From the NCBI RefSeq assembly GCF_001194135.2, contig NC_068986.1, positions 4,975,424-5,022,996 on the forward strand: a DNA stretch of 47,573 nt. The letters run 5' to 3'. The position numbers were made by a program, and so were the translations under genes. This DNA is from Octopus bimaculoides (lineage: Eukaryota). Below, piece by piece: positions 848 through 46,544 of the stretch. The notes under the pieces were generated by a model, which was not told the DNA's origin, searched no databases, and worked only from the letters and a program-made list of their open reading frames with translations. Position 1 is the first letter of the stretch. Every line of letters begins with the position of its first letter.

Positions 848-1195
<348 letters not shown>

Positions 1196-1412
1196 AATTT
1201 ATATACACAATTTCATTCCCCTCTTCAATTTCTTACCAAACCCTATTTCTCTCTGACTCTGACGCTGAAAACAAACACCAACGGCGACAGCAGCAACAAC
1301 AGCAGTCACCAGTCAAATTTCACACATGTATGTGTGTGTGTGTATATAAATATATATATATATATATAGGTCAGTAAATAGTGGGGTTGTGTTATATATA
1401 TATATATATATA

Positions 1413-1765
1413 CACACTGAATCGTGGCAAGGTATGGACGGTTTTCGGAGGACCGAAGAAATTATGTGTAAATGGAGAATTATACGAGGTACAGTACTAT
1501 ACAAAATACCGAAAGGATCTTCACCTCTTATATTACACCTTTCTTCCTCCTTTAACGCCGATGTGATGTAATTTCCTGGGAGAGAAATACTTTTGCGGCT
1601 GAAGATAGCTTTGTATTGTAAATTATACACTGATATAAAGCTTGAAACACGTGTACCGCAGATTCCTTTGTATTTTTGGTGTTATTTTTGGGATTTACAA
1701 TTTATTCTTTCACCTCAACCACGAGCTGGCATACACAGGTGCTTACAATTGTCAAGTATTACCTC
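1413..1765 (+). mobile_element. About 350-bp CpG-retaining hammerhead-bearing element between (TA)n tracts (Penelope-like or retrozyme-like)
   Basis: CpG density above background, (TA)n on both sides, contains the hammerhead at 1594-1660. Class assignment is inference. Confidence 0.55.
1594..1660 (+). ncRNA. Type I hammerhead ribozyme, apparently intact atypical variant
   Basis: Stem I TGCGG (1594-98) / CCGCA (1656-60); core CTGAAGA (1599-1605); 10-bp stem II AGCTTTGTAT/ATATAAAGCT closed by U.U at 10.1-11.1; GAAA (1644-47); palindromic stem III ACACGTGT (1647-54); GUA cleavage triplet, predicted cut after 1655. Confidence 0.8.
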
Positions 1766-1821
1766 TATATATATATTTATATATATATATATATATATAT
1801 ATACATACACACATATATATA

Positions 1822-1912
<91 letters not shown>
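1766..1912. repeat. (TA)n/(TG)n microsatellite
   Basis: Directly visible. Confidence 0.95.
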
Positions 1913-6055: not shown

Positions 6056-6587
6056 GTTAATCAATCAGTTAGCCATTATTGCATTTTCAACTCCAATACT
6101 GAAACATTATGTATCTTCAGTTAAACAAATATATAGACATTTCTTGTTTGAAATAAAAAGCTTTTTACTTTTGGTTTCTTTTAATATTTGGTATATTTGA
6201 AAGAGAGTTAATTTGAAGTAAACAATTCTTCAAACTTAGGCTATAATCAGCAATTGATTCTCCTTTGAAATTATTTTTTTAAGGTGAGATGAAGGAATAT
6301 CTAGAATTTCTCTGTATGTTTAGATATTTTTATGGAATTTTTTTGTGGCTGTTATGATCCTAGTTAAATCCTGTCCAATCAAATATCTATGAGGTGAATG
6401 ATGAAACATTTGAGAAAAAATTGAACTAACATTAGTTTCTGTTTCATTCCAAGACATTACCATTTTACTTAGATATTTGTTGCATATTGTAGTTTTTCTG
6501 ATTTACAACTTTTAGCATATGGTCTTCATTTTATCAAAGGAAATTTATTGAGAAACATTTAACAGCTAATTCAACTACACAAGTAAC

Positions 6588-6620
<33 letters not shown>

Positions 6621-7059
6621 GTTTAATGTCCGCTTTCCATGCTAGCATGGGTTGGACGACTTGACTGAGGACTGGTGAAACCGGATGGCAACACCAGGCT
6701 CCAATCTAAATTTGGCAGAGTTTCTACAGCTGGATGCCCTTCCTAATGCCAACCACTCAGAGAGTGTAGTAGGTGCTTTTACGTGTCACCTGCACGAAGG
6801 CCAGTCAGGCGATACTGGCAACGGCCACGCTCGAAATGGTGTCTTTTATGTGCCACCCGCACAAGCCAGTCCAGGGGCACTGGCAACGATCTCGCTCGAA
6901 AATCCTACGGAAGCCAGTCAGGCGGTACTGGCAACGGCCACGCTCAAAATGGTGCATCTCATGTGCCACCCGCACAAGAGCCAGTCCAGGGGCACTGGCA
7001 ACAATCTCACTTGGCTTGCCGGGTCTTCTCACGCACAGCACATTTCCAAAGGTCTCGGT
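6588..7059 (-). mobile_element. Family E SINE-like repeat with (GAT)n tail and an internal 113-bp duplication; interrupted by a MITE
   Basis: gccagtcaggcg at 6800 and 6913; homologous to 24280-24580. Confidence 0.85.
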
Positions 7060-7467
7060 AAATTTCATTTTAGAAGTGTTTTGTAGAGCAGGCAAGCACT
7101 GTTGGCTTAAAGTAAGTTCTCAATGAGCCATATTTACAGTCAAGTTCAAATAACAGTTGTAAGTTTTCCTTTATGCCCTTGAGAAAGGGATACATGTTAT
7201 GCAGCTTTAGTCACTTTTCCTACCGTTCATGAATGTGAAACCTTGCCAAAACACATTAGCTGAGCCAGAGGAGGAAAGGCAGAGTTCATGATGTTTTTTA
7301 GGTCCACTGAGATTAGTGGAAAGAAGGGAGGAAGTTATCCTCAGTTTGGAGACCAGGTTAAAAGGCATGCAGTGAACTTTGCTAAAGGCACACGAGTTCT
7401 CACTGAGAACTTACCTTAAGCCAACAGTGTTTGCCTGCTTTATAAAACATTTCTAAAATAAAGTTTA
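7059..7467. mobile_element. MITE with ~67-bp TIRs and a probable TA target-site duplication
   Basis: 7061-7127 aatttcattttagaagtgttttgtagagcaggcaagcactgttggcttaaagtaagttctcaatgag pairs with 7399-7465; TA at 7059-60 and 7466-67. Confidence 0.8.
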
Positions 7468-10070: not shown

Positions 10071-10480
10071 AGGCAAAAGGGAGGGGTCCATCAGAAAATT
10101 AGCTACAAGCTACAATATTAGGAGACGGTGCATGACGAATGATGTTTAATGAATGGTGTTTAACTCACAATCATAAAGTCATAAGTTCAATTTCTCAACC
10201 AGGCAGAACATTGAGTTCTTGAGCAAGGACCCAGTGCTTACATTCAATTATACCTCTTCCTTTCTCCCTCCAGTGGTCATATCTTGGATGTGCTATTGAG
10301 TCAACTATGAGAAGGCTGAGAAGGTATCTATGTTTATTCATGACCATATAAACACCTAAAGCAATTAGCAAAAGTATAGTACATGCTACCAACCCATACA
10401 TAATGATGAGTAACAGTTGACTGTACAATAACCAATTCATTCGATGTATTAATGTTGCTAATATTAGGAACAAATGTAAG

Positions 10481-11330
10481 ACGGCAGGCTGGCAGAATCG
10501 TTAGCATGCCAGGCAAAATACTTAGCGGTATTTCATCTGTCTTTGTGTTCTGAGTTCAAATTCCGCTGAGGTCAACTTTGCCTTTCCTCCTTTCAGGATC
10601 GATAAATTAAGTACCAGTTGTGTACTGTGGTCGATCTAATCAACTGGCCCCCTTCCCCCAAATTTCAGGCCTTGTGCCTAAAGTAGAAAGGAAAAGAATT
10701 GTTAGCACACCGGACAAAATTCTTAGCAACATTTTCTCTCTCTGCACGTTTTGGGTTCAAATTCCAACGAGGTCAACTTTGCCTTTCATCCTTTCAGAAG
10801 TCAATAAATTAAGTACCAGTTGAACACTGGGGTCGATGTAATTGACTAACGCCCTCCCTCAAAATTCCTGACCTGGTGCCAAAATTTAAAGCCAATATTA
10901 TGAACAACCTTAAGGCAAGAAACTAGCGGAATTGTTAGCATGCAGGACTAGACACTTAGTGGCATGTCATCTATCTTTACCTTCTGGGTTCAAATTCCAT
11001 TGAGGCTAACTTTGCCTTTCCTTTTTTCAGGGTCAATAGAAAAAGTACTAGTTGAACACTGGGGCCAATGTAATCAACTTACCCCTCCTTGAGATCACAG
11101 GCCTTGTGCCAAAATTTAAAGCCAATATTATAAACAACCTTAAGGCAACAAACCGGGAGAATCATTAGCATGCTGGATTAGATGCTTAATGGAATTTTGT
11201 CCATCTTTATGTTCTGAGTTCAAATTCTACCGAGGTTAACTTTGCCTTTCATCTTTTCAGGATCAATAGATGTAATTGACTTACCATTTCCCCCAAAATT
11301 GCTGGCCTTGTACCAAAATTTGAAGCCATA
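10481..11330 (+). mobile_element. Four head-to-tail copies of a tRNA-derived SINE (family B)
   Basis: Repeated gttagcatgc...gagttcaaattcc...aactttgcctttcatcctttc...gccttgtgcc units starting near 10481, 10700, 10912 and 11142. Confidence 0.85.
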
Positions 11331-15696: not shown

Positions 15697-16575
15697 TATA
15701 ATGATACCACTACTTAAACTCGCCTTGTTTAGGAGAACCACTATAAATGCTACTTCTACTGCTGCTGCAGCTGCTATTACTCAATCTTGTCCTGTTTAGA
15801 GGAATCATTCTTTGAAAATCTTCCATCTTCTAAGTTTCATTCTATTCATTCTGAATACAGTGCCAGTGGAATAGAGGAAGAATAAGAAAAGAAAAATAAA
15901 CAAAAGACTGCTAAGTACCAAAATACTAAAATACCAAAAATCACTGTCAAGTGACCAGCTATAAGCACCCAGCCAGAACGACTGACCAATGCAGAAAAAA
16001 AAAAGTAAAAAAAGTTTTTAAAAAACCCCAGAACCAGCAACCCTACAGATTAGATGCAGTGTTACATTTTCAGTGAGCAGGTCACAGTTTCCATCACAAC
16101 AATTTTGACACCATATTATAAACAATAAATGTTTTAGTGAAGCTAACAGTCTTTGTGCATGTCTTCCATGCTACAATCTGTTTAAACACTAGACTGCTTC
16201 CTCAGTAGTCAGAAAATATTTCAGCTCTTAACTGTTCCATTTCTGACTCTCCACAAAAATCTAGTGCAATTCACTCAGGAGTAATATTTATATCAGTAGT
16301 TTCTAACTGAGGTGCTGCAACACCATAGGGTCATAGACAAAAGTATTGTGGCATTTTTTTTTGTTTCTTTTATCTGAATAATACAATTCAGTATTAACTA
16401 TTCAGTTTTTGTGCAATATGGAGTTGTGTATCTTAAACATGGGGAGATAGAGTGATGAGATCAGAGGAACACTTCAAAACCTTTGATCTATATATTTGGA
16501 ATGTTGCAACTAATGTTATAGCTACTGCTGCTGCATTCATGTCATCTTTGACTGCATACAAAATAAAAATGATAA

Positions 16576-16716
16576 GGCATGGCTGTGTGGTTAGAAGTTT
16601 GCTTTCAAACCATATTGTTCAAGGTTCAGTCCTAATGAGTGTGTTCTACTATAGCCTCTGACCAACCAAAGCCTTGTGAGTGGATTTGGTAGGAGGAAAT
16701 TGAAAGAAGCCTGTCA
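16576..16716 (+). mobile_element. Family A SINE head, ending at a 10-N gap (16717-16726)
   Basis: ggcatggctgtgtggttagaag...ggttcagtcc...gaaagaagcctgtc. Confidence 0.8.
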
Positions 16717-16726
16717 NNNNNNNNNN

Positions 16727-16900
16727 TGACTGTGGCCATGCTGGAGCACCACCTTTTAGTCTAAGACTTATTCTTTGTAAGCCTGATACTTATTCTATTG
16801 GTCTCATTTGCTAAACTGCTAGTTACAGGGACATAAACATATCGACATCGATTGTCAAGCAATAGTGGGGGGGGGGACAAACAGACACAAAGATACACAC
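16727..16900 (-). mobile_element. Family D SINE body
   Basis: tgactgtggccatgctggagcacc...gattgtcaagc...gggggacaaacagacacaaagatacac. Confidence 0.8.
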
Positions 16901-16958: not shown

Positions 16959-17548
16959 GTGTATAAGAAGGGATGGCCACTAAGTGGACCTTCTTATACA
17001 CATGTAATACAATTCTTCTGAATTTTCAGATTTTTTTATATGCTAGGCCACTTGGTTTTAAATTGAATTAATATTCAATTTATCACCCACTATATATAAA
17101 TAATAATTTAAACAATTATGTTCTCCAGCTGGCAACATATACTGCAGTGAATTATTCTCTGCAGAATTGTTTCCGGAATTTGGCGTGCCAGAGCTGAGAC
17201 ATTTTGAAAAATAACCCCAATGTAATCGGTAGAACTGTACGTAAGTCTTATTTTATGAAGACAATTCGTGTATAGTTCTGCAAATTATATTGATTCTAGA
17301 ACGATTATGCTGAAGAGAGCACGGATGTTGTTACGTAAGTAAAACGTTAATGTTGAAACTGGTACACAATTAATTCTTTATTAAGTATATATCTCATTTT
17401 GTCTTACCCGCTTATGTTCTGGTGGTTTGCGAAATTTTTTTTCTGAAGAACATTATTTTTCTTTGTGGTTGGGTCGTTGATGACCTCTTTCTAGCATATC
17501 GGATGTCCACTTAGTGGTCATCCCTTCTTATACACATGTAATACAATT
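16959..17548 (+). mobile_element. 590-bp CpG-retaining element with nested inverted and direct terminal repeats and an internal hammerhead
   Basis: 31-bp inverted repeat 16959-16989 / 17505-17535 (1 mismatch); 26-bp exact direct repeat 16989-17014 / 17523-17548. Confidence 0.75.
17304..17370 (+). ncRNA. Type I hammerhead-like motif, slightly decayed
   Basis: Stem I ATTATG/CACAAT (5 of 6 pairs); CTGAAGA (17310-16); long imperfect stem II 17317-17354 with GTAA loop; GAAA (17355-58); ACTGGT (one C>T from palindrome ACCGGT); GUA site, cut after 17364. Confidence 0.65.
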
Positions 17549-18289
17549 TTTCTACCTTCTCTCTCTACAACAGTCTTTCTTTTCTACTTCTGTCTTTTCT
17601 CTCTATAACAGCCTTCCTTCCCAACCTTTACATTCACTACAGTAGCAAACATTCCCAACTTCGTACTTTTGCTTTCTCCAAAATAGTCCTTTTTCCTAAC
17701 AGTAACCTTCCTCTCTATCTGAGTCTACTATTCCTAATCCAGATCAATTTTTGACTTCCTTACTGACATCATTGATAAGTTGTTTTTGGTTTGTCTTTTA
17801 CTTTGATTGTAGGCATGGTGAGGTGGTGGGAGGTAGATAATTAAGAAGCTCGCTTCACTGCCATATGTTTACAGGTACAATCTCACTGTTGAATTTATGT
17901 TATTTCCTGGATCCAATCTGGTTACATTTTCTTTATTCCTTATTGAGAAAAGGTTGTCTGTTGTGTATCCCTGTGAGTCACATAGTCACACACAAATCAA
18001 GATGTTCCATATGACATACTTAAATGTCCATCATCAGGACATTGTGTGCATTAATATAAATTTGATGCAGTAACGTACATTATACTAAAACTGCAAAGAC
18101 TTTGTGCCATTATATGTAAAAAAAAAAAGTGGGATCTAACTATTCCTTTTAAAAATCATCAAATTGTGATTTTATATCATCTAGGACTTTAAACTAATTT
18201 GTAAAATTCCCATTTGCCCAATCGTTTTTTTTTTTTTCTAATTATTTACTAGATTCTAAAAGTAACAGGTCAAATATCAATAGATATCT

Positions 18290-18730
18290 ACTAAAATGAA
18301 ATACGCACATTCAAAACAACTGAAATGAAAGATCAGGATTCAAAACAAGTAGAATGAAGGATCAAAATTCAAACCAACTGGATGAAGTATCAAGATTCAA
18401 AACAATGAAAAATGAAGTATTAAAATTCAAAATAATTAGGATGAAGGATTAGAATTCCAAAAAACAGAAATGAAGTGTGAGGATTAAAAACAGAGGGAAT
18501 GGAAGATCAGGACTTGAAACAACATGAATGAAGGATCAGGATTCAAAACAACTTGAATGAAGGATCAGGATTTAAAACAACTGGACTGAAGGATCAGGAT
18601 TTAAAACAAATTAAATGAAGTGTCATGATTCAAAACAACTGGCATGAAGGATCAAGATTCAAAATATAGAGATGAAGGGTCAGGATTCAAAACTACTAGA
18701 ACGAAGTGTCAGGATTCTAAACAACTGCAA
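18290..18730 (+). repeat. 29-bp minisatellite, about 15 diverged units
   Basis: Consensus by eye GAATGAAGGATCAGGATTCAAAACAACTG. Confidence 0.9.
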
Positions 18731-19967: not shown

Positions 19968-20753
19968 GTCTCCTTTTTTCAGCAACAGCTTGATGCATTG
20001 GTGAAGTCAACTGCGTTGGAGAGCATAAGGATTAAAGTTGTTGCCTGTATCATGATGATCCATGCCTGTATCATGATGATCCATGCCTGCATCATGACTG
20101 TTGCTCAATGCTTTGTGAACACTGTAAAGGCTGTAAGACATGACAGCTGTAATGGAATCTACAAAACCATGGCCATCAGGAAGGGACACAGCAGGCGTTC
20201 TGACTGTGTCCACATGCCAGAACTCATCCAACAATTAATGAACAGGGTCTTAGGCTCAGTTCAGATAGCTATGTGAAGCTACTGGAGACTGTGGTCAAAC
20301 CCTAGCTGGAGAGGGTTGCTGCTGGAGGGCCATATGTGGGGCAGCAGGATTCAGTTTCTTGCCATACGTCTGGAAAGAGTCAGAAGTGGTTGTCGGAAAA
20401 TTTTTGTGACTCCACCAGTCCCAATTTCTGGCCTTCTAATTCCTCCACTTGTAATCCCATGAATTACTGTATATAGGTTGTGGTTGAGAAAGACACCAAC
20501 TACTCTGCCTACAACACCAAGGATGAGTTGGTGGCCAAGATGAAGGTGGTGTTAGCTCTTCCAGGGACACAGTGAAGGCCACACATGCCAAGTTCTGGAG
20601 CCACCTTGAGAACATGGTAGGAGCTGAGGGTAGTTACTTTATGTAAACTGTTATTTCCCAGCTACAACCCAGTTGATATTTTTTTTGATTTTTTAAAATA
20701 CTTATATTATTGGATGGGATATTGTGTTTTCATTACCTTTTAAGCACCCTGTA
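19968..20753 (+). mobile_element. Second DD37D/maT-like relic, 5' end lost
   Basis: Homologous to about 3310-4120 (PYVGQQDSVSCHTSGKSQKWLSENFCDSTSPNFWPSNSSTCNPMNY); ends caccctgTA; has a local 21-bp duplication near 20044-20085. Confidence 0.8.
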
Positions 20754-21429
20754 TATGTACATAGACATGCTCACACACACTGGGCTTGTTTTAGCTTTTC
20801 ACCTACCAAATCCACTAACAAGGCATGGTCAACTCAGTGCTATAGAAAAAGACGCTCACTCAAGATAGTATAGAGCGGGACTGAACCTGAGATCAGGCAC
20901 ATAGCCGTACCTACCTCTTTGTCTTAAATAATTCCACTAATGAATTCTTTCATCAATTATGTAACAAGTACTCTGAAGGTTTCATTTTACTGAGAAGGTC
21001 AGAACATGATCAAAACTTGTTCAGAGTTGTCTCCCATACAAACTAAGATAATAATACCAATAATAATATTAGTTAATGATTAATATGTTTTTTCCTCATC
21101 GCAATTATTTCTAGTCAAACTTTTAGTTCTCCATGCAGTAGATATGTTAACACTAACTTTTCTAACTTCTGCTTAGGCTAATTTGGCTAACATTTTCTCT
21201 ATTTACATTTTATTTATGCCACTTTCTTTTACCAACATATGCATAAATATAACAATACATCTGCTGTAAGATGGCACTAAGCTTCAAGTTTGTATTTCTG
21301 ATCCATCAAATCCTGCTCATTTCATTTGTTGCTCGAAATATCAGTGCTTTGCAATCATGTCTATTTTGCATTATCATAGAATCTGTCACAGCCTACTTAA
21401 TGTTTCTAACAAAACTGTTGATTTTTCAA

Positions 21430-21830
21430 CATGCGTGGTTAAGAAGCTCGTTTTGCAACTATGAGGTTTCAAGTTCAACCCCACTGCACAGCACTTTGGT
21501 TAGTGACTTTTACAATAGCCCTGTACTGACTAATGCCTTGAGAGTGAATTTAGTAGATGGAAACTGTGTGGAATCCTATTGTGTGTGTGTATGTTTGTGT
21601 GTGTATATGTGTCTATGTTTTTGTGTCTGTGTGTCACCCCCATCAGTGTTCAATAACTAGTGTTGTTTTTTTTTTTTACATCTCTGTAACTTAGCAGTTC
21701 AGCAAAAGAAACCAACATAATAAGTACCAGACTCTAAAACTGTACTGAGATTCTTTTGCTTCACTAAAACCTTTCAAGTTAATACCCCAGTATGGCCACA
21801 ATTGAATGTTTGAAACAAATAAAAGATGAA
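21430..21830 (+). mobile_element. Composite SINE: family A tRNA head, internal (TG)n, family D body
   Basis: Head and body are colinear here, suggesting A and D are parts of one SINE split by a variable microsatellite. Confidence 0.7.
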
Positions 21831-21844
21831 AGAGATATGTTGAA

Positions 21845-23020
21845 AGCTGCAAGAATGAAGTGCCAAAGTTCAAGACAACTGGAATGAGGAACCAGGATTC
21901 AAGATAAGATGAATGAAAGGGCAAGGTTTTAAAACAACTAGAATGAAAGATCTGATTCAAAACAACTGGAATGAAGGATCAGAATGTAAAAGAACTAAAG
22001 AGAAGAATTAGGATGCAAAACATGTAGAATGAAGGATCAGGGTTTCCAGAAAATAGAATGAAGGATCAGATTTCAAAACAACTGAAATGAAAGATCAGGA
22101 TACAAAATAAATGGAATGTAGGATCAAGATTCAAAACAAACTAGAATGAAGGATTGAGATTAAAAATATCTGGAATGAAGTATGAAGATTCAAACAAGTA
22201 GAATGAAATGTGAGGGCTCAACACGACTAGAATAAATGATCAGGATTCAAAACAACTACAATGAAGGATCAGGATTCAAAACAACTGGAATGAAGCTGAG
22301 GATTCAGAACAATTGCTTTCAAGCGTTAGGATTCAAAGCAACTGGAATAAAGAATTAGGATTCAAAACACCTGGAATGAAGCATAGGAATTCAAAAGGAC
22401 TGAAATGGAGGATTAGGATTCAAAACAACTAGAATGAAGGATCAGGATTCAAAACAGCTGGGAGGAAGGATTAGGATTCAAAACAACTGGCATGAGTGGA
22501 TTGAAAGATCAGGATTCAAAACAACTGGAATTAAGTGTGAGGATTCAAAAAAAAAACTGAAATGAAGGATTAGAACTTAAAACAATTGGAATAATGGATC
22601 AAGTTTTAAAACAGCTAGACTGAAGGATCAAAATTTAAAACAACTAGAGTGAAGGATCAGGATTCAAAACAACTGGGATTAAGGATCAGAAGTCAAAACA
22701 ACTGGGATGAAACATGTGGCTTCAAAACAACCAGAATGTCGGGTCAGTATTCAAAGATGGAATAAAGTGTCAGGATTCAAAACAAGTAAAATAAAGGATC
22801 AAGATTTTAAATGACTTCAATGAAAAATCAGAACTCAAAACAGTTAGCATAAAGGATCATACTTCAAAGTAACTTGAATGAAATGTGAAGATTCGAAACA
22901 ACTGGAATAAATGATCAAGATTAAAAATGACTTTGAATGAAGGCTCTCGGTTAAAAATTACTGGAATGAGGATTTGAGATTCAAAAGAACTGGGATGAAG
23001 AATCATGATTCAAACAATTT
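21845..23020 (+). repeat. 29-bp minisatellite, about 40 diverged units
   Basis: Same consensus as 18290-18730. Confidence 0.9.
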
Positions 23021-24224: not shown

Positions 24225-24275
<51 letters not shown>

Positions 24276-24580
24276 TATCATCATTCAACGTTTTTTGTCT
24301 ATGCTGGCATGGGTTGGACAAGTTAACCAGCGCTGGTAAGCTGAGGGAATGCACCAGACTCCAATCTGATTTGCCATGGTTTCTATGGCTAGATGCCCTT
24401 ACTAATGCCAACCAGTCTGAGAGTGTAATGGGTGCTTTTACATGCCACCGGCATGGGTGCTAGTTGTGTGACACCAATATCTGCCACAACTATGATTTCA
24501 CTTGGCTTGATGGGTCTTCTACTCAAGCATGACATAATGCCAAAGGTCTCGGTCATTTATCATTGCTTCCACGAGACCCA
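24225..24580 (-). mobile_element. Family E SINE-like repeat with long (GAT)n tail
   Basis: (cat)n...ttcaacg...catgggttggac...ctagatgcccttactaatgccaacc...caaaggtctcggtcatttatcattgc. Confidence 0.8.
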
Positions 24581-24830: not shown

Positions 24831-26621
24831 ATGAATTCTTACATTCCACATCTTTGATGGAAACTGTTTGAACAAAAACAGTGATACTATGCTAACATTC
24901 CCTTTTAACAAATTGCCAAACACAAGAATAAAAAGAAGAAAAATCTTTTCCTTGAATAACAGGGAAGAAAATAACAGGAAAGGCAACCACCGTAAAAATA
25001 ATATCTCAATATTAGGTGTTTGTTCAACAAATCTGAAACTAATGAAGAAACAAGCAAATATAGACAGTCGCCTGGCACATTGTGAAATGAAATCTTTGGG
25101 CAGAAATCATATGCAATAAAAATGTCTGAAAGTAAATTAACATAATGATAAAAGGTTTTGATTTTTGAATAAGAAATAATGCAAGTTGATTGTATCTACT
25201 TTTATCTCGTATTTCAATATCTCAAGGTTAGGGTCCCTTCTTCAGGAAGTCCTCAACTTGTATTATTTCTTATAATTCACATAGTTTTAGCTTTTTTAAA
25301 AAAATTAAAAACATTTATCTAGTTCAGAAAATGCTTCAGGCAATCTATACTACTTTTATAAACAGATGATAGAATGTAATTTGAGGGAGATTTAGTAACT
25401 GTTTTTTGACAGTAGAACTGATTATAGTTATGAAGAAAAACTTAAATTTTTTCTTAAAACTTTTACTATCTTACCACAAATATTCTATATCAATGACATT
25501 CATTGAAGTTTTGTAATAACACAGGACTCTTCTAACCCTCCTAGATGGTCTGTACTCAGCTTTAAAAATTGAACCCAATATTAATGTTTTTTTTTGTTTG
25601 AGATAATCAACAATGTGTTCAATATTATAGAATGTTGAATCAAATATACAGCCCATATATATATATATATATAGAAGAGTGATAAAATGTGTCTGTGAAT
25701 TAATAATCATAAAACTTTACAGTCAAACTACTTCGTGTTGTTTGATTCCTTCACATTTCAATAAAAACAGAAATAGATATTATATTTTAGTATTGATTGA
25801 AGTGTTGCAGTGTATTCATGTAACTATTGGCAATAAAGCAAATAAGACACACTGTTGCATTCTTGTTGTTGTTTAACCCCAGGTCAACTTTGGCATAGCA
25901 GACCTATGATCAAAGGTGTTCTAGAGTTGTGATTAGGTGCATATATCATCATCATCATCATCATCATCATCATCGTTATCATCATCATCATTAATGTCCA
26001 TTTTCCATGCTGGCAGGGATCGGACAATTTGACAGGATCTGGTGAGCCCCAGAACTGCATTGTGCTCTTGAAAATACCCTTCATTGTCTCCCATTACACC
26101 AATTTCCACTTAATACTTTGTCTCTCATAAGAATGATGCAATAAATACCAGACAAGGTACTGTGATTGGCATACCTACTAAAACCCTTGAAAGCTGTACT
26201 CAAGTATGGTAACAGTCCAAAGACGAATGAAAAAGAATCACATTTTCTTTTTTTGAGATGATAAAGTGTAATTTTAGAGTGATTAGCTGCTATTTCTGGC
26301 AAACTGAGGGACACATAGGGGGTTCTTTATTGGTTTGAGTTATGTTGTTTCTGTAACAACTTCCATTAAGTAGCTTCTCAATTAACTAGCATTGGAATGA
26401 TGAATTGGAAAAACTGGTACAATACCAAACATGATATCATTCAGTATTTTGTTATGACTCTTTACATTCCTAGTCCAAATCCCACCAAAGATTCTTTTAC
26501 CTTTCATCAATCTTGGGCTATTAAAATAAAGCACCAGTCATGTATTCTTAATGACCAGTATAGTCAATTCTACATGATAGAATTGACTGTACAAATTACC
26601 AGAGATGTGTGCTATTGTCCC

Positions 26622-26840
26622 AATATTGGTTTCAAATTTTGACACAAGGTCAACAATTTTGGGTGGAAGGTTAAGTCGATTACATCAACTCCAGTGTTCA
26701 ACTATGCTTATTTTATTTACCTCAAAAAGATGGAAAGCAAAGTTGACTTCAACAAAATTTGAACTCAGACCATAAAGATGGATTAAATGTGGCTAAATAT
26801 TTCACTTGGCATGCTAATGATTCTGCCTACTTGCCACCTT
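26622..26840 (-). mobile_element. Family B SINE
   Basis: Reverse complement of the 10481 and 26867 copies. Confidence 0.75.
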
Positions 26841-26866
26841 AGCCTGTTGTGCCAATATTACAAATC

Positions 26867-27084
26867 AAGGCAGCAAGCTAGCAGAACATTAGCCCATGGG
26901 GGGAAATGCTTAGTGGCATGTCATCCATCTTTACATTCTGGGTTCAAATTATACCAGGGTCAATTTTGCATTTCATCCTTTTGTGGTCGACAAAATAAGT
27001 ACCAGTTGATCACTGGAATTGATGTAATTGATTTACCCCTCCCCTAAAATTGCTGACCTGATGCCAAAATTTGAAACCAATATT
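26867..27084 (+). mobile_element. Family B SINE flanked by a 15-bp direct repeat (candidate TSD)
   Basis: ccaatattacaaatc at 26852-26866 and 27077-27091. Confidence 0.8.
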
Positions 27085-38305: not shown

Positions 38306-38789
38306 ATGGTTATGGTCCAATGTAGAAATACATATACAAACAACAAATAGATAATAGCACTGTTGTTGTTGTTGTTGTTGTTGCTCTGATCAAGCAGTCC
38401 TGTGGTACACAGACAGTTGGCCAAATAATTGGAAATGTGACCCACGGGTCTGAGTTGGCCTTTTTTTCTTCCAGTGACTCCTATAAATATGTAATGTGGG
38501 TTTGTGGATGAGATTAAATCTAATTGCTATGCATAATAACTAAGAGCAACCCATTAATTATTATTTTTATTATTATTATTATTATCATCATCATCATCAT
38601 CATCATCGTCGTCGTCGTCGTCGTCGTCGTCATCGTCATCATCACTACTACTACTACTACTATCATTATTATTTGGCCAGTGATACAGTATTCCAAGCAA
38701 CAGCTGTCTCTTGGTGATTAATCTTAATAATCATGTTATTGATTACTATCGTTAAAATGTATTTTTATTAAAAACTAATTTGTTCAGGT

Positions 38790-38935
38790 ATCTGCTTCAT
38801 CGTCATCGCCGTCATCACCACCACCACCACCATCATCATCATTATCATTGTCATTGTTATGATCATCACCATCATCACCATCATCATTGTCATCATCTTC
38901 ATTGTCATCTTCATTGTCATCTTCTTCATCATCAC

Positions 38936-38968
<33 letters not shown>

Positions 38969-39065
38969 TCTCATCATCATCATCATCATCTTCATCATCA
39001 TCATCGTCATCATCAGCATCTTCATCATCATCATCGTCATCATCGTCATCATCATCATCATCATC

Positions 39066-39110
<45 letters not shown>

Positions 39111-39125
39111 TTCATCATCATCATG
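38790..39125. repeat. Long degenerate (CAT)n array
   Basis: Directly visible; yields poly-H, poly-S, poly-I, poly-D and poly-M ORFs. Confidence 0.95.
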
Positions 39126-39399
39126 CACTTGTTTTCTATGCATTTCTTCCTTGTCATACTGGAGTTAGCTTTTGACTCTCAGTTACTTTTCAACTGATCC
39201 AGTGTATGGATCTTTTTTGTTAATATTTCCTTTCTTTTTATTTTATTTTATTTTATTTTATTTTTTTTATATGACTACAGATGAATGTAACCATATACAC
39301 ATACAAAACACAATACAAAAACTAAAATCTGACATACACATGTAGAAATATATATTTGTACACACACACATAATGAAACATTCACAGATTCTTATTACT

Positions 39400-40506: not shown

Positions 40507-40889
40507 CGCATACATTTTTTGTTCATGTTTTTCAAATATCCTAAAATATAAGTCTGTATTTTTTCTATCCTGTTATATGTTAGTTAGGTATCTTCTGCCA
40601 TAAATATAACTATATTTATAAAAATATTCTCCAAATATTGGTAAATAGAGACACTGCAGCTGAAATAACTGATTTTTGTCTAGCTGTCAGCCTGTCAATT
40701 TTAACACGAGAAACGTCTATCTTTTTCCCTTTAAAAAAAGTCTCTTTTAAACGCAATTTCAGGTAGAAAGAGACAGAGATATACAGAGAGGGAGGAAGAG
40801 AGGGGGGAAAGTGGGGGAGAGAGAGAGTGTGAGAAAATACACCGAGTTTTATATGATTGCATTAGAGAAGCAGATGAAGAAAAAGAATG

Positions 40890-41045
40890 CAGAGACAGAC
40901 AGACAGATAGATAGATTGACGGACGGACGGACGGACGGACGGACGGACGGACGGACGGATGGACGGACGGACGGACGGACGGACGGACGGACGGATGGAT
41001 AGACGGACAGACGGACAGATGGATGGATGGATGGATGGATGGATA
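40890..41045. repeat. Compound tetranucleotide array (GACA)(GATA)(GACG)n(GATG)n
   Basis: Directly visible. Confidence 0.95.
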
Positions 41046-41229
41046 GTAAAAAGGAGAAGGAGATGAATAAAGAGAATAAAGACATATAGATATGAGAGAG
41101 GAGTGAAGGGGAATTAAGAAATAGATTAGAAATAAATACATTGACCATAGGAAGGTAAAAGAGCGACAAATAAGAGAAAGAGAGAGAGAGAGAGAAAGAA
41201 AGAAAGAGAATGGAAAAGTAAATGATAGA

Positions 41230-41660: not shown

Positions 41661-42562
41661 GCATATACGAAAAGAGAAGAGAGAGAATGAGGGATAATAT
41701 TTTATTTCATTAATTTCAAGTTGTAACATATTTAATATATCTTGACATCATTTACACTCAGATATTTTTGAAATCTAAACGAATATTCTGCTTACTGTTC
41801 AGATAAAAACAAAAATCAAAACGTATTTCAAGCAAAAGCAAAAAAAAAAAACAATAATAAATTAGAATAAAATAAAAGAGAAAAAAGAATTAGACAAAGC
41901 CAAAAGAATATTTATTCATCATGTCAAAGTAAGAATGATGTTGGAGAGGAAAAAATACTGATTCTATATTGTAGGAAATTAATTTTAGTCCAGCCGTAAC
42001 TTCATTTAGGTGAGAAGGTTATATTTAAAGTGTTTACCATTATTTTCTTCTTATATCTATGTATTTATTTATTAATTTTATATCACAATTGGTGAACAAC
42101 AATGCTGTTGGTTGCAGGTTTCCAATGGGCCAATCATAGATTCACTGCATTTATGATGGCAAAATAGTGAAGGGGAAGTTTTTGGCAATTTGGTACAGAA
42201 TAAATATTGGAATAATATAGATTTTCTCTGTTTTTACATCGTTTGCTGAAATATTTTTGTTAAAGAAATCCACATATCATCATTAACATCATCATTGTCG
42301 TCGTCATTTTAACATCCTTTTTTTCCATGTCCACATAGGTAGGACAGTGTTTATCAAGGTAGATTTACTAAGGCTGGATGCCCTGGGTAAGGCAATATTT
42401 TGCCAAGGTCAGACATGTTCTCACAGAATATTGGAAATGAATGACACTGCTTGTATGACTGATATTCATTTAAAACTTGGAGAAGCAAACACACATACAC
42501 TTGAACATTGTATATACATACATACACACATACATACATGCATACATACATACATACATACA

Positions 42563-42770
42563 CTTATGACCAAGGAAGACCATCACTGTCCACCTATGGC
42601 TGAGGAAGGCCATTGCCCATGCAAAATACAAACAGTGCCCATGCATGAGGTTATTACATCAGCAGTCAGCTTCACCCACGTTCACGTCCATAGCTTCCAT
42701 GCATGCTGTGACACCCTCCTACATGCCCAGGCATCAGATAGTCACTTTGCCAGCAACTGCACAGCCTAAA
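42563..42770. mobile_element. Unclassified interspersed repeat, copy 2 (see 1925-2107), followed by (ATGTACGT)n and a family D body at 42862-43052
   Basis: Shared blocks with 1925-2107; both copies end tgcacagcctaaaat. Confidence 0.7.
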
Positions 42771-43364
42771 ATGTACGTATGTACGTATGTACGTATGTAC
42801 GTATGTACGTATGTACGTACATATGGATGTATGTATGTATATATGCATGCATGTATGTAAGTACGTGTGTGTCTTTGTCCCTCACCACTGCTTGACAACC
42901 AGTGTTGGTTTGTTTACATCTCCATAACTTAGCAGTTTAGCTAAAAGAGAACAATAAATAAGTATTTGTCTTAAAAATAAGCACTGTGACTAAACCCTTC
43001 AAGGCAGTGCTCAGCATGGTCACAGTTCAAAAACTGAAACAAAAAAGCATAAAAAATAAAATGATTCTTGGATGACCTGTTTGAGTATCATATTTGGATT
43101 TATCTTTGTTTTAAGAAAGGTTATGTCAAAAGTATTCAATTCCAATCCTTCTGTAAAACTAGGTATTTCAAATTTCCAGATCTTAACTCAACAGAAGAGA
43201 CCCAGCACTTGTGATACAGCGGAATCTCAGAATGTTGATTATACATTTGATTATTGTTTACTGAGAGGGGAAAGGCTGGGTGTTCATGATACTCTTATAG
43301 TGTCATATTTTAGATGCTCCACACATCAAAAAAATTTTTTAAATAGCACTCCATCAGTTGTGAT

Positions 43365-46326: not shown

Positions 46327-46490
46327 GGCGCAGGAGTGACTGTGTGGTAAGTAGCTTGCTTACCAACCACATGGTTCCAGGTTCAGTCCCACTGCGTGGC
46401 ACCTTGGGCAAGTGTCTTCTACTATAGCCTCAGGCCGACCAAAGCATTGTGAGTGGATTTGGTAGACGGAAACTGAAAGAAGCCCACCGT
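46327..46490 (+). mobile_element. Well-preserved tRNA-derived SINE head (family A)
   Basis: ggcgcaggagtgactgtgtggtaagtagcttgc (A-box-like), ggttcagtccc (B-box-like), ccttgggcaagtgtcttctactatagcc; runs into (TA)n. Confidence 0.9.
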
Positions 46491-46491
46491 A

Positions 46492-46544
<53 letters not shown>

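What the first reader, a model, noticed from the sequence alone, without database searches (positions are those of the whole stretch)
1594..1660. Apparently intact, atypical type I hammerhead ribozyme hidden between (TA)n tracts
Seen: every hammerhead element in the correct order and register. These are a perfect 5-bp stem I abutting the core on both sides, CUGAAGA, a 10-bp stem II, GAAA, an 8-nt perfect palindrome ACACGUGU as stem III, and a GUA cleavage site. Established: type I hammerheads with palindromic stem III occur with Penelope-like elements and retrozymes and can cleave as dimers; 10.1-11.1 is normally G-C. Inference: this is a U10.1.U11.1, long-stem-II variant in a young (CpG-retaining) ~350-bp mobile unit that inserts in TA microsatellites, and it may still self-cleave if transcribed.
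Basis: partly seen in the sequence, partly recalled or inferred. Interest (0 to 1): 0.85.

Follow-up and report, generated by a model that had tools for sequence, protein, structure and literature searches.

The report
Solitary retrotransposon-type hammerhead motif in octopus
A complete hammerhead self-cleaving RNA motif really is present in a 353-bp CpG-rich insert between (TA)n tracts of an octopus genome, but it looks like an ordinary, solitary copy of the dimer-dependent hammerheads carried by Penelope-like retroelements, and its two "atypical" features are already known from other animals.

Summary
At 1592-1662 (+) the window has a type I hammerhead. Its parts are a 7-bp stem I, CUGAAGA, a U.U mismatch followed by a 10-bp stem II, GAAA, the palindrome ACACGUGU, and GUA with cleavage after 1655. 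It is the only good hit in the window. Controls with scrambled cores on 129 kb of real octopus DNA give about 0.0005 hits of this quality per window. The host unit (1413-1765) has CpG o/e 0.93 against 0.26 for the window and lies between (TA)10 and (TA)45.

The architecture matches the "minimal" hammerheads of Penelope-like elements (PLEs): long helix II, short helix I, palindromic helix III, activity as dimers. A U10.1.U11.1 mismatch is already documented in active natural hammerheads, including about 60,000 axolotl retrozyme copies. So this is a probable new member of a known kind, not a new variant.

Family membership, mobility and catalysis remain untested. No second copy was found in the window or in 81 kb of O. 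vulgaris DNA. No Rfam hammerhead model matches. No PLE reading frame lies next to it. The collections I could search hold almost no octopus non-coding DNA. A solitary copy has no dimer partner in cis, so it is probably inert in place.

The parts
1393..1412 (.). Left flank, (TA)10 microsatellite. A further (TA)13 lies at 1343-1368, separated by a 24-nt unique spacer.
   Evidence: TRF; sequence
1413..1765 (+). 353-bp CpG-rich unit that carries the hammerhead. It is a putative solitary retroelement fragment: a 3' end or pseudo-LTR of a Penelope-like element (PLE), or a retrozyme-like monomer.
   Evidence: CpG o/e 0.93 against 0.26 for the window. No protein homologue in six frames. Its fold is not unusually stable.
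1592..1598 (+). Stem I, 5' strand (UUUGCGG)
   Evidence: Pairs with 1656-1662, 7 bp including one G.U
1599..1605 (+). Conserved core box C3-A9, CUGAAGA
   Evidence: Sequence; one of only 16 CTGANGA sites on the + strand of the window
1606..1643 (+). Helix II hairpin. It has a U1606.U1643 mismatch at 10.1/11.1, then 10 bp (1607-1616 with 1633-1642, one G.U), and a 16-nt loop 2 (1617-1632) that can form an inner 4-bp hairpin.
1644..1647 (+). Conserved core box G12-A15.1, GAAA
   Evidence: Sequence
1647..1654 (+). Helix III as the 8-nt palindrome ACACGUGU. A monomer forms 2 bp plus an ACGU loop. A dimer forms an 8-bp intermolecular helix.
   Evidence: The cofold puts the dimer at -46.9 kcal/mol against 2 x -17.0 for monomers, with the 8-bp helix III formed.
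1655..1656 (+). Predicted cleavage site: GUA(17), then the cut, then C1.1, between 1655 and 1656
   Evidence: Inferred from hammerhead numbering; not tested
1656..1662 (+). Stem I, 3' strand (CCGCAGA)
1766..1856 (.). Right flank, (TA)45 microsatellite. (TG)29 follows at 1856-1914, then the tail of another repeat, which has a second copy at 42562-42775.
   Evidence: TRF

Best explanation
The window is Octopus nuclear DNA. The 353-bp unit at 1413-1765 is most likely a solitary, fairly recent insertion of a retroelement fragment into a pre-existing (TA)n tract. The fragment would be either the 3' end or pseudo-LTR of a 5'-truncated Penelope-like element (PLE), or a monomer of a PLE-derived non-autonomous 'retrozyme-like' element. 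It carries a type I hammerhead of the PLE 'minimal' class.

**Inferred mechanism, by analogy with the family.** In a multimeric or tandem transcript of the parent element, two hammerheads pair through the palindrome ACACGUGU. This builds an 8-bp helix III. Each core then cleaves after A17 (1655), leaving a 2',3'-cyclic phosphate and a 5'-OH, which trims the transcript to unit length.

The copy seen here has no partner in cis and only a 2-bp helix III as a monomer. In place it is probably a passive relic. Its U.U pair at 10.1/11.1 is a known, tolerated variant.

**Shown:** the motif, its statistical excess, the CpG excess, the (TA)n flanks and the thermodynamic preference for a dimer.
**Inferred:** retroelement origin, recent insertion and catalysis.
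For: - The motif is complete and in register. It is the only strong hit in the window.
- The chance rate at this quality is about 0.0005 per window from decoy cores on 129 kb of real octopus DNA. It was 0 in 400 shuffles. Only 7% of decoy hits were palindromic.
- The architecture matches published PLE minimal hammerheads, which have helix II of 7-8 bp, helix I of 4-5 bp and a palindromic 15.2-16.2/loop 3. Most occur as single motifs in truncated PLEs and act as dimers (PMC4209133; PMC6765202).
- U10.1.U11.1 is known in active natural hammerheads and is the best-tolerated mismatch (PMC3088659). It also occurs in axolotl HHR_Amex2, which has a 2-bp helix III plus tetraloop, sits in a 350-bp unit and cleaves efficiently as a dimer (PMC7229834).
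- The predicted dimer forms the double hammerhead and is about 13 kcal/mol more stable than two monomers.
- CpG o/e is 0.93 in the unit against 0.26 in the window, like the young SINE copies in the same window.
- The unit has (TA)n on both sides. Hydra- and Naiad-clade PLEs insert into (TA)n, show strong 5' truncation, and occur in molluscs, with Naiad families in Octopus spp. (PMC8557442 and its preprint).
- The organism is Octopus. The SINE-derived reading frame hits only O. bimaculoides and O. vulgaris proteins.
- GIY-YIG remnants of PLE type occur in 2 of 4 sampled O. vulgaris loci.
Against: - No second copy of the unit or of the hammerhead was found in the window or in 81 kb of O. vulgaris DNA. 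No family alignment exists, so no covariation test was possible.
- No Rfam hammerhead model matches, even at E<=10.
- The G10.1-C11.1 pair, described as highly conserved in PLE hammerheads (PMC4209133), is absent.
- No reverse transcriptase or GIY-YIG reading frame lies next to the unit.
- The unit as a whole does not fold more stably than shuffled sequence.
- Insertion cannot be proven, because no target duplication can be read in (TA)n and no empty orthologous site was available.
- The region is so rich in microsatellites that unique DNA between (TA)n tracts is common. A 24-nt example lies at 1369-1392.
Confidence: 0.6

Rival explanations
1. The motif is a chance resemblance. On this reading the unit is ordinary non-coding or other transposon-derived DNA, and a hammerhead-like arrangement has arisen in it at random. 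It has no ribozyme ancestry or function.
For: - It is a single copy with no relatives found.
- No Rfam hit.
- The most conserved helix II pair is missing.
- Stem II is AU-rich, and such stems arise easily in DNA of 35% GC.
- At about 0.0005 per window, or roughly 4e-5 when the palindrome is also required, a genome of a few gigabases is still expected to hold a few to tens of such chance motifs.
- A weak chance-level hit does occur elsewhere in the window, at 17310.
Against: - Several independent features agree, and my descriptor did not demand them: an 8-nt palindromic helix III, a 10-bp helix II, a 7-bp helix I, a CpG-rich unit that looks like a transposon, and (TA)n flanks that match a known PLE target.
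- No decoy core reached the observed quality in 129 kb x 719 decoys.
- Genuine PLE hammerheads number in the thousands in several animal genomes (PMC4209133), which is more than the expected number of chance motifs.
Confidence: 0.3
2. The motif is a once-canonical PLE hammerhead that has been inactivated by mutation. On this reading the U.U pair is damage rather than a functional variant. C11.1 to U would be a CpG transition at C11.1-G12, and G10.1 to U a transversion.
For: C11.1-G12 is a CpG in every canonical hammerhead. The window is strongly depleted of CpG (o/e 0.26). G10.1-C11.1 is reported as highly conserved in PLE hammerheads (PMC4209133).
Against: The unit keeps 12 CpGs, three of them inside the hammerhead, so little CpG decay has occurred. 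Two separate hits at exactly the two paired positions would be needed. U.U is a documented natural variant (PMC3088659, PMC7229834).
Confidence: 0.07
3. The unit is a host-domesticated ribozyme or another functional gene. Possibilities include a conserved intronic hammerhead, a small RNA gene, or a coding exon using the 88-codon open frame on the minus strand.
For: The minus-strand frame is open across 1413-1680. The high CpG content could reflect protection from methylation rather than youth.
Against: No Rfam family matches and no tRNA was found. No protein homologue appears in any of the six frames. Structural stability is not above background.
Confidence: 0.03

Closest known systems
Minimal hammerheads (min-HHRs) in the pseudo-LTRs of metazoan Penelope-like elements (PLEs) (Cervera & de la Pena 2014, PMC4209133; Lunse et al. 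2017, cited in PMC6765202)
   Same: Both are type I. Both have a helix II that is longer than usual, a short helix I without a defined loop 1, and a very short helix III with palindromic sequence that implies action as a dimer. Most published examples are also solitary copies in truncated elements.
   Different: This motif lacks the highly conserved G10.1-C11.1 pair. Instead of a single bulged nucleotide after A9, it has a symmetric U.U. Its helix II is longer still (10 bp, with a 16-nt loop). No PLE reading frame or second pseudo-LTR lies nearby, and no family has been shown.
Axolotl retrozyme hammerhead HHR_Amex2 in the ~350-bp non-LTR retrozyme Rtz_353 (Cervera & de la Pena 2020, PMC7229834)
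   Same: Both have a U.U mismatch at the base of helix II and a 2-bp helix III capped by a tetraloop. The unit size is about 350 bp in both. The axolotl motif cleaves weakly as a monomer and efficiently as a dimer.
   Different: The axolotl units form tandem arrays of about 60,000 copies. They have a short helix II and loop 1-loop 2 contacts. The octopus unit is solitary and its helix II is a long hairpin. There is no sequence homology to speak of.
PLEs that target (TA)n: the Hydra clade and Naiads (Craig et al. 2021, PMC8557442)
   Same: Both show (TA)n on both sides. Strong 5' truncation is usual in these clades. Hydra families are reported in molluscs and Naiad families in Octopus spp. Some Naiads carry hammerhead 'half-cores' 35-50 nt apart, and here the two core boxes are 38 nt apart.
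   Different: No reverse transcriptase or GIY-YIG reading frame accompanies this unit. Naiads are reported to lack canonical hammerheads, and those of cephalopods are described as old remnants, whereas this unit looks young.
Schistosome Sm-alpha / Sj-alpha SINE-like retroposons bearing a hammerhead (cited in PMC6765202)
   Same: Both are short, dispersed non-coding retroposons carrying a type I hammerhead. That Sm-alpha/Sj-alpha units are a few hundred bp long is my recollection, not checked here.
   Different: The schistosome elements have canonical, highly active hammerheads with loop-loop contacts and a Pol III promoter. No convincing A or B box is seen here.

Membership tests
Hammerhead ribozyme (general definition) | Conserved core boxes C3-U4-G5-A6-N7-G8-A9 and G12-A13-A14, in the correct order | tested here: met
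   CUGAAGA at 1599-1605 and GAA(A) at 1644-1647
Hammerhead ribozyme (general definition) | A15.1-U16.1 pair followed by H17 (not G) at the cleavage site | tested here: met
   A1647-U1654 and A1655; the triplet is GUA
Hammerhead ribozyme (general definition) | Three helices around the core (here in type I topology) | tested here: met
   Helix I is 7 bp and helix II is 10 bp. Helix III is 2 bp in a monomer and 8 bp in a dimer.
Hammerhead ribozyme (general definition) | G10.1-C11.1 pair at the base of helix II | tested here: not met
   U1606.U1643 instead. This is a documented, tolerated natural variant (PMC3088659; PMC7229834), so it does not exclude membership.
Hammerhead ribozyme (general definition) | Match to a curated covariance model (Rfam Hammerhead_1, _3, _II, HH9, HH10) | tested here: not met
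   No hit at the gathering threshold on the whole window, or at E<=10 on 1400-1800. The 38-nt helix II insert and the U.U pair would be penalised by models built on short-helix-II hammerheads.
Hammerhead ribozyme (general definition) | Mg2+-dependent self-cleavage at the predicted site | not testable with these tools
   Requires in vitro transcription of monomer and dimer constructs
PLE minimal hammerhead (Cervera & de la Pena 2014) | Long helix II (7-8 bp) and short helix I (4-5 bp) without a defined loop 1 | tested here: met
   10 bp and 5-7 bp (PMC4209133)
PLE minimal hammerhead (Cervera & de la Pena 2014) | Palindromic 15.2-16.2 and loop 3, giving the ability to dimerise | tested here: met
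   ACACGUGU. The cofold dimer forms an 8-bp helix III, at -46.9 kcal/mol against -34.0 for two monomers.
PLE minimal hammerhead (Cervera & de la Pena 2014) | One extra nucleotide between A9 and 10.1, followed by G10.1-C11.1 | tested here: not met
   U1606 does follow A9. But the register with a 5' bulge pairs for only 2 bp. The stable register is a symmetric U.U, then A-U.
PLE minimal hammerhead (Cervera & de la Pena 2014) | Located in a pseudo-LTR of an element that encodes reverse transcriptase plus GIY-YIG endonuclease | tested here: inconclusive
   No such reading frame lies near the unit. Published min-HHRs are mostly solitary, in truncated PLEs.
PLE minimal hammerhead (Cervera & de la Pena 2014) | Belongs to a consensus family within the genome, with covariation in the helices | not testable with these tools
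   There was no access to an Octopus genome. Only 81 kb of O. vulgaris could be fetched, and it held no copy. The JGI metagenome collection lacks even the octopus SINE.
Metazoan non-LTR retrozyme | Tandem repeats (from a dimer to multimers) of a 170-400-bp unit, each with a type I hammerhead | tested here: not met
   The unit size fits (353 bp). But the copy is solitary, with no second copy in 47.6 kb. Monomeric derivatives are described in PLE/retrozyme families (bioRxiv 10.64898/2026.07.22.740005).
Metazoan non-LTR retrozyme | Canonical hammerhead with a 6-bp helix I, a 4-bp helix II and loop 1-loop 2 contacts | tested here: not met
   Helix II is a 10-bp hairpin with a 16-nt loop, and no loop 1 is present.
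Metazoan non-LTR retrozyme | Expressed as linear and circular RNA of unit length | not testable with these tools
   No transcriptome data were available
PLEs that target (TA)n (Hydra and Naiad clades) | Insertion into a (TA)n microsatellite | tested here: met
   (TA)10 on the left and (TA)45 on the right. This is consistent with the preference, but it does not prove an insertion.

The most novel reading that the evidence does not exclude
The unit could be one copy of a still-active short retroelement family in Octopus that targets (TA)n. One version has it as the 3' end of a Naiad- or Hydra-type Penelope-like element (PLE). Its working ribozyme would be a hammerhead with a long helix II and a U.U pair.

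Standard descriptors miss such a motif because they limit the spacing between CUGANGA and GAAA. That would mean PLE clades reported to 'lack canonical hammerheads', or to carry only 'half-cores' 35-50 nt apart (PMC8557442), do in fact carry complete ribozymes.
Probability: 0.1. Interest if true: 0.5.

Novelty: new member of a known kind. Interest (0 to 1): 0.25.

Why it matters
If the family is real, it adds cephalopods to the animals whose genomes carry dimer-type hammerheads on Penelope-like elements (PLEs). It also gives a second natural lineage, after axolotl retrozymes, that uses U.U at 10.1/11.1. And it suggests that hammerhead searches with a short limit on helix II under-count PLE ribozymes, which bears on the claim that Naiad PLEs have no hammerhead.

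It does not open a new mechanism. Hammerheads in animal retroelements, their palindromic helix III and their dimer dependence are well established. If it is a solitary relic or a chance motif, it has no wider consequence.

Tried and rejected
1. **Rfam.** The gathering threshold on the whole window and E<=10 on 1400-1800 gave no hammerhead.
2. **Self-BLAST of the unit in the window.** No second copy.
3. **Six-frame translation of the unit against 5.8 billion proteins.** Nothing. I then ran a control with the abundant octopus SINE frame, which gave only 8 hits. The database therefore holds almost no octopus non-coding DNA, and the negative result says nothing about copy number.
4. **Exact look-ups of three window ORFs.** None is on record.
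5. **Pattern scans of public collections.** The hammerhead pattern found nothing in JGI metagenomes, GTDB genomes or IMG/VR. The octopus SINE 21-mer is also absent from the metagenomes, so these negatives are uninformative too.
6. **O. vulgaris DNA.** I fetched 81 kb through four annotated proteins. It held no copy of the unit, no descriptor hit and no Rfam hammerhead. Two O. bimaculoides proteins were not on record.
7. **Reaching octopus PLE reading frames.** A GIY-YIG remnant found in L001 gave no candidates as a query.
8. **Alternative register.** A single 5' bulge followed by A10.1-U11.1 pairs for only 2 bp, so I rejected it.
9. **Retrozyme-like compact fold of the whole unit.** Not supported: z = +0.5 on the plus strand and -0.54 on the minus strand.
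10. **Other identities for the unit.** tRNA, NUMT and coding exon were all rejected.
11. **Full-text search for the sequence strings.** Only unrelated hits.
12. **Supplementary files of PMC8557442.** These hold the PLE consensus sequences but are not available here. Lunse et al. 2017 is not held either.

Full report
**1. The observation**

The sequence at 1592-1662 (+) reads UUUGCGG-CUGAAGA-U-AGCUUUGUAU-(16-nt loop)-AUAUAAAGCU-U-GAAA-CACGUGU-A-CCGCAGA.

| Element | Coordinates | Detail |
|---|---|---|
| Stem I | 1594-1598 / 1656-1660 | 5 perfect bp, extended to 7 bp by a U.G and a U-A pair |
| Core box 1 | 1599-1605 | CUGAAGA |
| 10.1/11.1 | 1606 and 1643 | U.U mismatch |
| Stem II | 1607-1616 / 1633-1642 | 10 contiguous pairs, one of them G.U |
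| Core box 2 | 1644-1647 | GAAA |
| Helix III | 1647-1654 | 8-nt palindrome ACACGUGU |
| Cleavage site | 1653-1655 | GUA, cut predicted between 1655 and 1656 |

In the centroid fold of the 67-mer, helices I and II form as drawn.

**2. Is it more than chance?**

- A descriptor that I wrote finds this as the only hit on either strand of the window. The descriptor requires the two core boxes, A15.1-U16.1, H17 and three helices, and allows a mismatch at 10.1/11.1.
- A still looser descriptor adds one weak hit at 17310.
- Dinucleotide shuffles give 0.06 relaxed hits per window, 0.0125 with stem I >=5 and stem II >=4, and 0 in 400 shuffles with stem II >=8.
- Shuffling destroys real genomic texture, so I also kept the real DNA and scrambled the motif. 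I ran 719 permuted 'decoy' cores on the window, and then on the window plus 81 kb of Octopus vulgaris DNA. Hits per 47.6-kb window were 0.044 (relaxed), 0.011 and 0.0005 at the three levels. There were none at the observed level (stem I >=7, stem II >=10).
- Only 6 of 85 relaxed decoy hits had a palindromic helix III.

The motif is therefore highly unlikely to be chance in a single window. In a genome of a few gigabases, though, a few to a few tens of chance motifs of this grade are expected. Statistics alone cannot settle the question.

**3. Context**

- The window is a draft eukaryotic assembly, rich in microsatellites, with N gaps and about 35% GC.
- A SINE signature that I remembered from octopus is present.
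- A SINE-derived reading frame at 6685-7083 hits only Octopus bimaculoides and O. vulgaris proteins. The organism is therefore an Octopus.
- The hammerhead lies in a 353-bp non-repetitive unit (1413-1765), bounded by (TA)10 on the left and by (TA)45 followed by (TG)29 on the right.
- The right-hand microsatellite continues into the tail of another repeat, which has a second copy at 42562-42775 and is there also preceded by a microsatellite. The (TA)n tract therefore probably existed before the unit arrived.
- The unit has 12 CpGs, with o/e 0.93 against 0.26 for the window. The only other non-microsatellite stretches this rich in CpG are a SINE-like copy at about 6600-6900 and a segment at 17100-17500.
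- The CpG excess fits a recent insertion into old, CpG-depleted DNA. It does not prove one.

**4. What the unit is not**

- It matches no Rfam family, either at the gathering threshold or at E<=10 on 401 nt.
- It contains no tRNA.
- It has no protein homologue in any of the six frames.
- Its overall fold is not unusually stable on either strand.
- No reverse transcriptase or GIY-YIG reading frame lies nearby.

**5. Search for relatives**

- There is no second copy in the window.
- The public DNA collections open to pattern scans contain neither the hammerhead nor the very abundant octopus SINE.
- The protein database returns only 8 hits for that SINE.
- All of these negatives are therefore uninformative about copy number.
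- I fetched four 20-kb pieces of the O. vulgaris chromosome assembly through annotated proteins. They hold no copy of the unit, no hammerhead by descriptor and none by Rfam.
- They do hold two GIY-YIG endonuclease remnants of the type found in Penelope-like elements (PLEs).
- An attempt to use one remnant to reach octopus PLE reading frames found nothing.
- The key test, a multi-copy family with covariation, could therefore not be run.

**6. Comparison with what is known**

[quoted passage not shown] They are thought to act as dimers and have low activity in vitro. Most occur as single motifs in truncated elements. They also report a conserved extra nucleotide after A9 and a highly conserved G10.1-C11.1 pair.
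- *How the octopus motif compares.* It shares the first group of traits but has a symmetric U.U in place of 'bulge plus G-C'. The bulge register pairs for only two base pairs, so I rejected it.
- *The U.U mismatch.* It is not new. Perreault et al. found natural hammerheads whose stem II starts with U10.1-U11.1. They note that this mismatch supports more cleavage than any other mispair, citing Ruffner et al. 1990 (PMC3088659). The axolotl HHR_Amex2 family has about 60,000 copies in a 350-bp retrozyme. It has a U.U at the base of helix II and a 2-bp helix III with a tetraloop, and it cleaves 22% as a monomer and efficiently as a dimer (PMC7229834).
- *Dimer prediction.* ViennaRNA cofolding of two copies of 1592-1662 predicts exactly the double hammerhead, with an 8-bp intermolecular helix III. 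The dimer is at -46.9 kcal/mol against -34.0 for two monomers.
- *Target preference.* PLEs of the Hydra clade carry canonical hammerheads, almost all insert into (TA)n, and they occur in molluscs. Naiads also prefer (TA)n, are heavily 5'-truncated, and have families in Octopus spp. Naiads are said to lack canonical hammerheads, although some have core halves 35-50 nt apart (PMC8557442 and its preprint). In this motif the two boxes are 38 nt apart.

**7. Most likely explanation**

The unit is most likely a solitary retroelement fragment that inserted into a (TA)n tract. It would be either the 3' end or pseudo-LTR of a 5'-truncated PLE, or a monomer of a PLE-derived non-autonomous element. It carries a dimer-type hammerhead of the PLE minimal class.

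By analogy with that class, the ribozyme would work in multimeric transcripts of the parent element. Two motifs would pair through ACACGUGU and cut after A17. The solitary copy here lacks a partner in cis and is probably inert.

I put 0.6 on hammerhead-lineage retroelement origin. The remainder is 0.3 on chance resemblance, about 0.07 on a canonical hammerhead damaged by mutation, and about 0.03 on some other function.

**8. Novelty and interest**

If real, this is a new member of a known kind. Neither 'atypical' feature is new, and hammerheads are already known to be very abundant in animal genomes that carry PLEs.

The most novel reading still open is that (TA)n-targeting PLEs of octopus use long-helix-II hammerheads that standard descriptors miss. 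I give this a probability of about 0.1.

Overall interest is low to moderate (0.25).

Noticed in passing
window 16966-17550: A CpG-rich segment of about 520 bp (12 CpG per 350 nt, o/e about 1.2) is bounded by direct repeats of about 50 bp. The repeat core is CTTCTTATACACATGTAATACAATT, preceded by the near-palindrome GGATG.CCACT.AGTGG. It looks like another young insertion with a long target duplication, or an LTR-like structure. It contains a weak hammerhead-like hit under the relaxed descriptor at about 17306-17391 (+), which is most likely chance. It has no sequence similarity to the unit at 1413-1765.
   Followed up: partly
window 46330-46500 (+), 16570-16760 (+), 20750-20970 (-), 860-950 (-): These are copies of a tRNA-derived octopus SINE with an internal (TA)n/(TG)n microsatellite. 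The microsatellite appears to seed many of the (TA)n/(CA)n tracts in the window, which would make abundant targets for any element that inserts into (TA)n.
   Followed up: partly
window 6564-7100, 700-815, 24226-24320, 25936-26030, 42270-42775: A second repeat family starts with (ATC)n followed by GTTTAAYGTCCGCTTTCCATGCTRGCATGG. The copy at about 6600-6900 is CpG-rich (o/e about 0.7). Its spurious 133-aa reading frame matches 'uncharacterized' proteins annotated in O. bimaculoides and O. vulgaris, so some annotated octopus proteins are repeat-derived.
   Followed up: partly
window 18256-18720 and 21786-22950: Two arrays of a 29-bp minisatellite lie about 3 kb apart.
   Followed up: no
window 10418-11270, with related arms at 26707-26984: A tandem repeat with a period of about 200-230 bp (3-4 units) has an inverted, related copy about 16 kb away.
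   Followed up: no
window 1369-1392: A 24-nt unique spacer (GGTCAGTAAATAGTGGGGTTGTGT) is isolated between (TA)13 and (TA)10, just upstream of the unit. It could be a short PLE 'tail' extension of the kind described in PMC8557442, although those are 30-40 bp. It could equally be ordinary interruption of the microsatellite.
   Followed up: no
window ~11976 (+): A reverse transcriptase motif of LINE type (FYADDT) appears in a degenerate reading frame. It is a remnant of a non-LTR retrotransposon and is unrelated to PLEs.
   Followed up: no
L001:14223-14336 (+) and L003:13262-13426 (+) (O. vulgaris GCA_951406725.2): [quoted passage not shown] They occur in 2 of 4 randomly sampled 20-kb loci, so PLE-related debris seems common in octopus. 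No hammerhead motif was detected near them.
   Followed up: partly
L002:7027-7103: A mir-9/mir-79 precursor (Rfam RF00237, 62 bits) lies in an O. vulgaris locus that I fetched for other reasons.
   Followed up: no
window 38500-39200 and 40870-41050: Long trinucleotide arrays (ATC/GTC) and tetranucleotide arrays (GACG/GATG) create spurious reading frames rich in His, Asp or Met, and account for the highest CpG peaks in the window.
   Followed up: no
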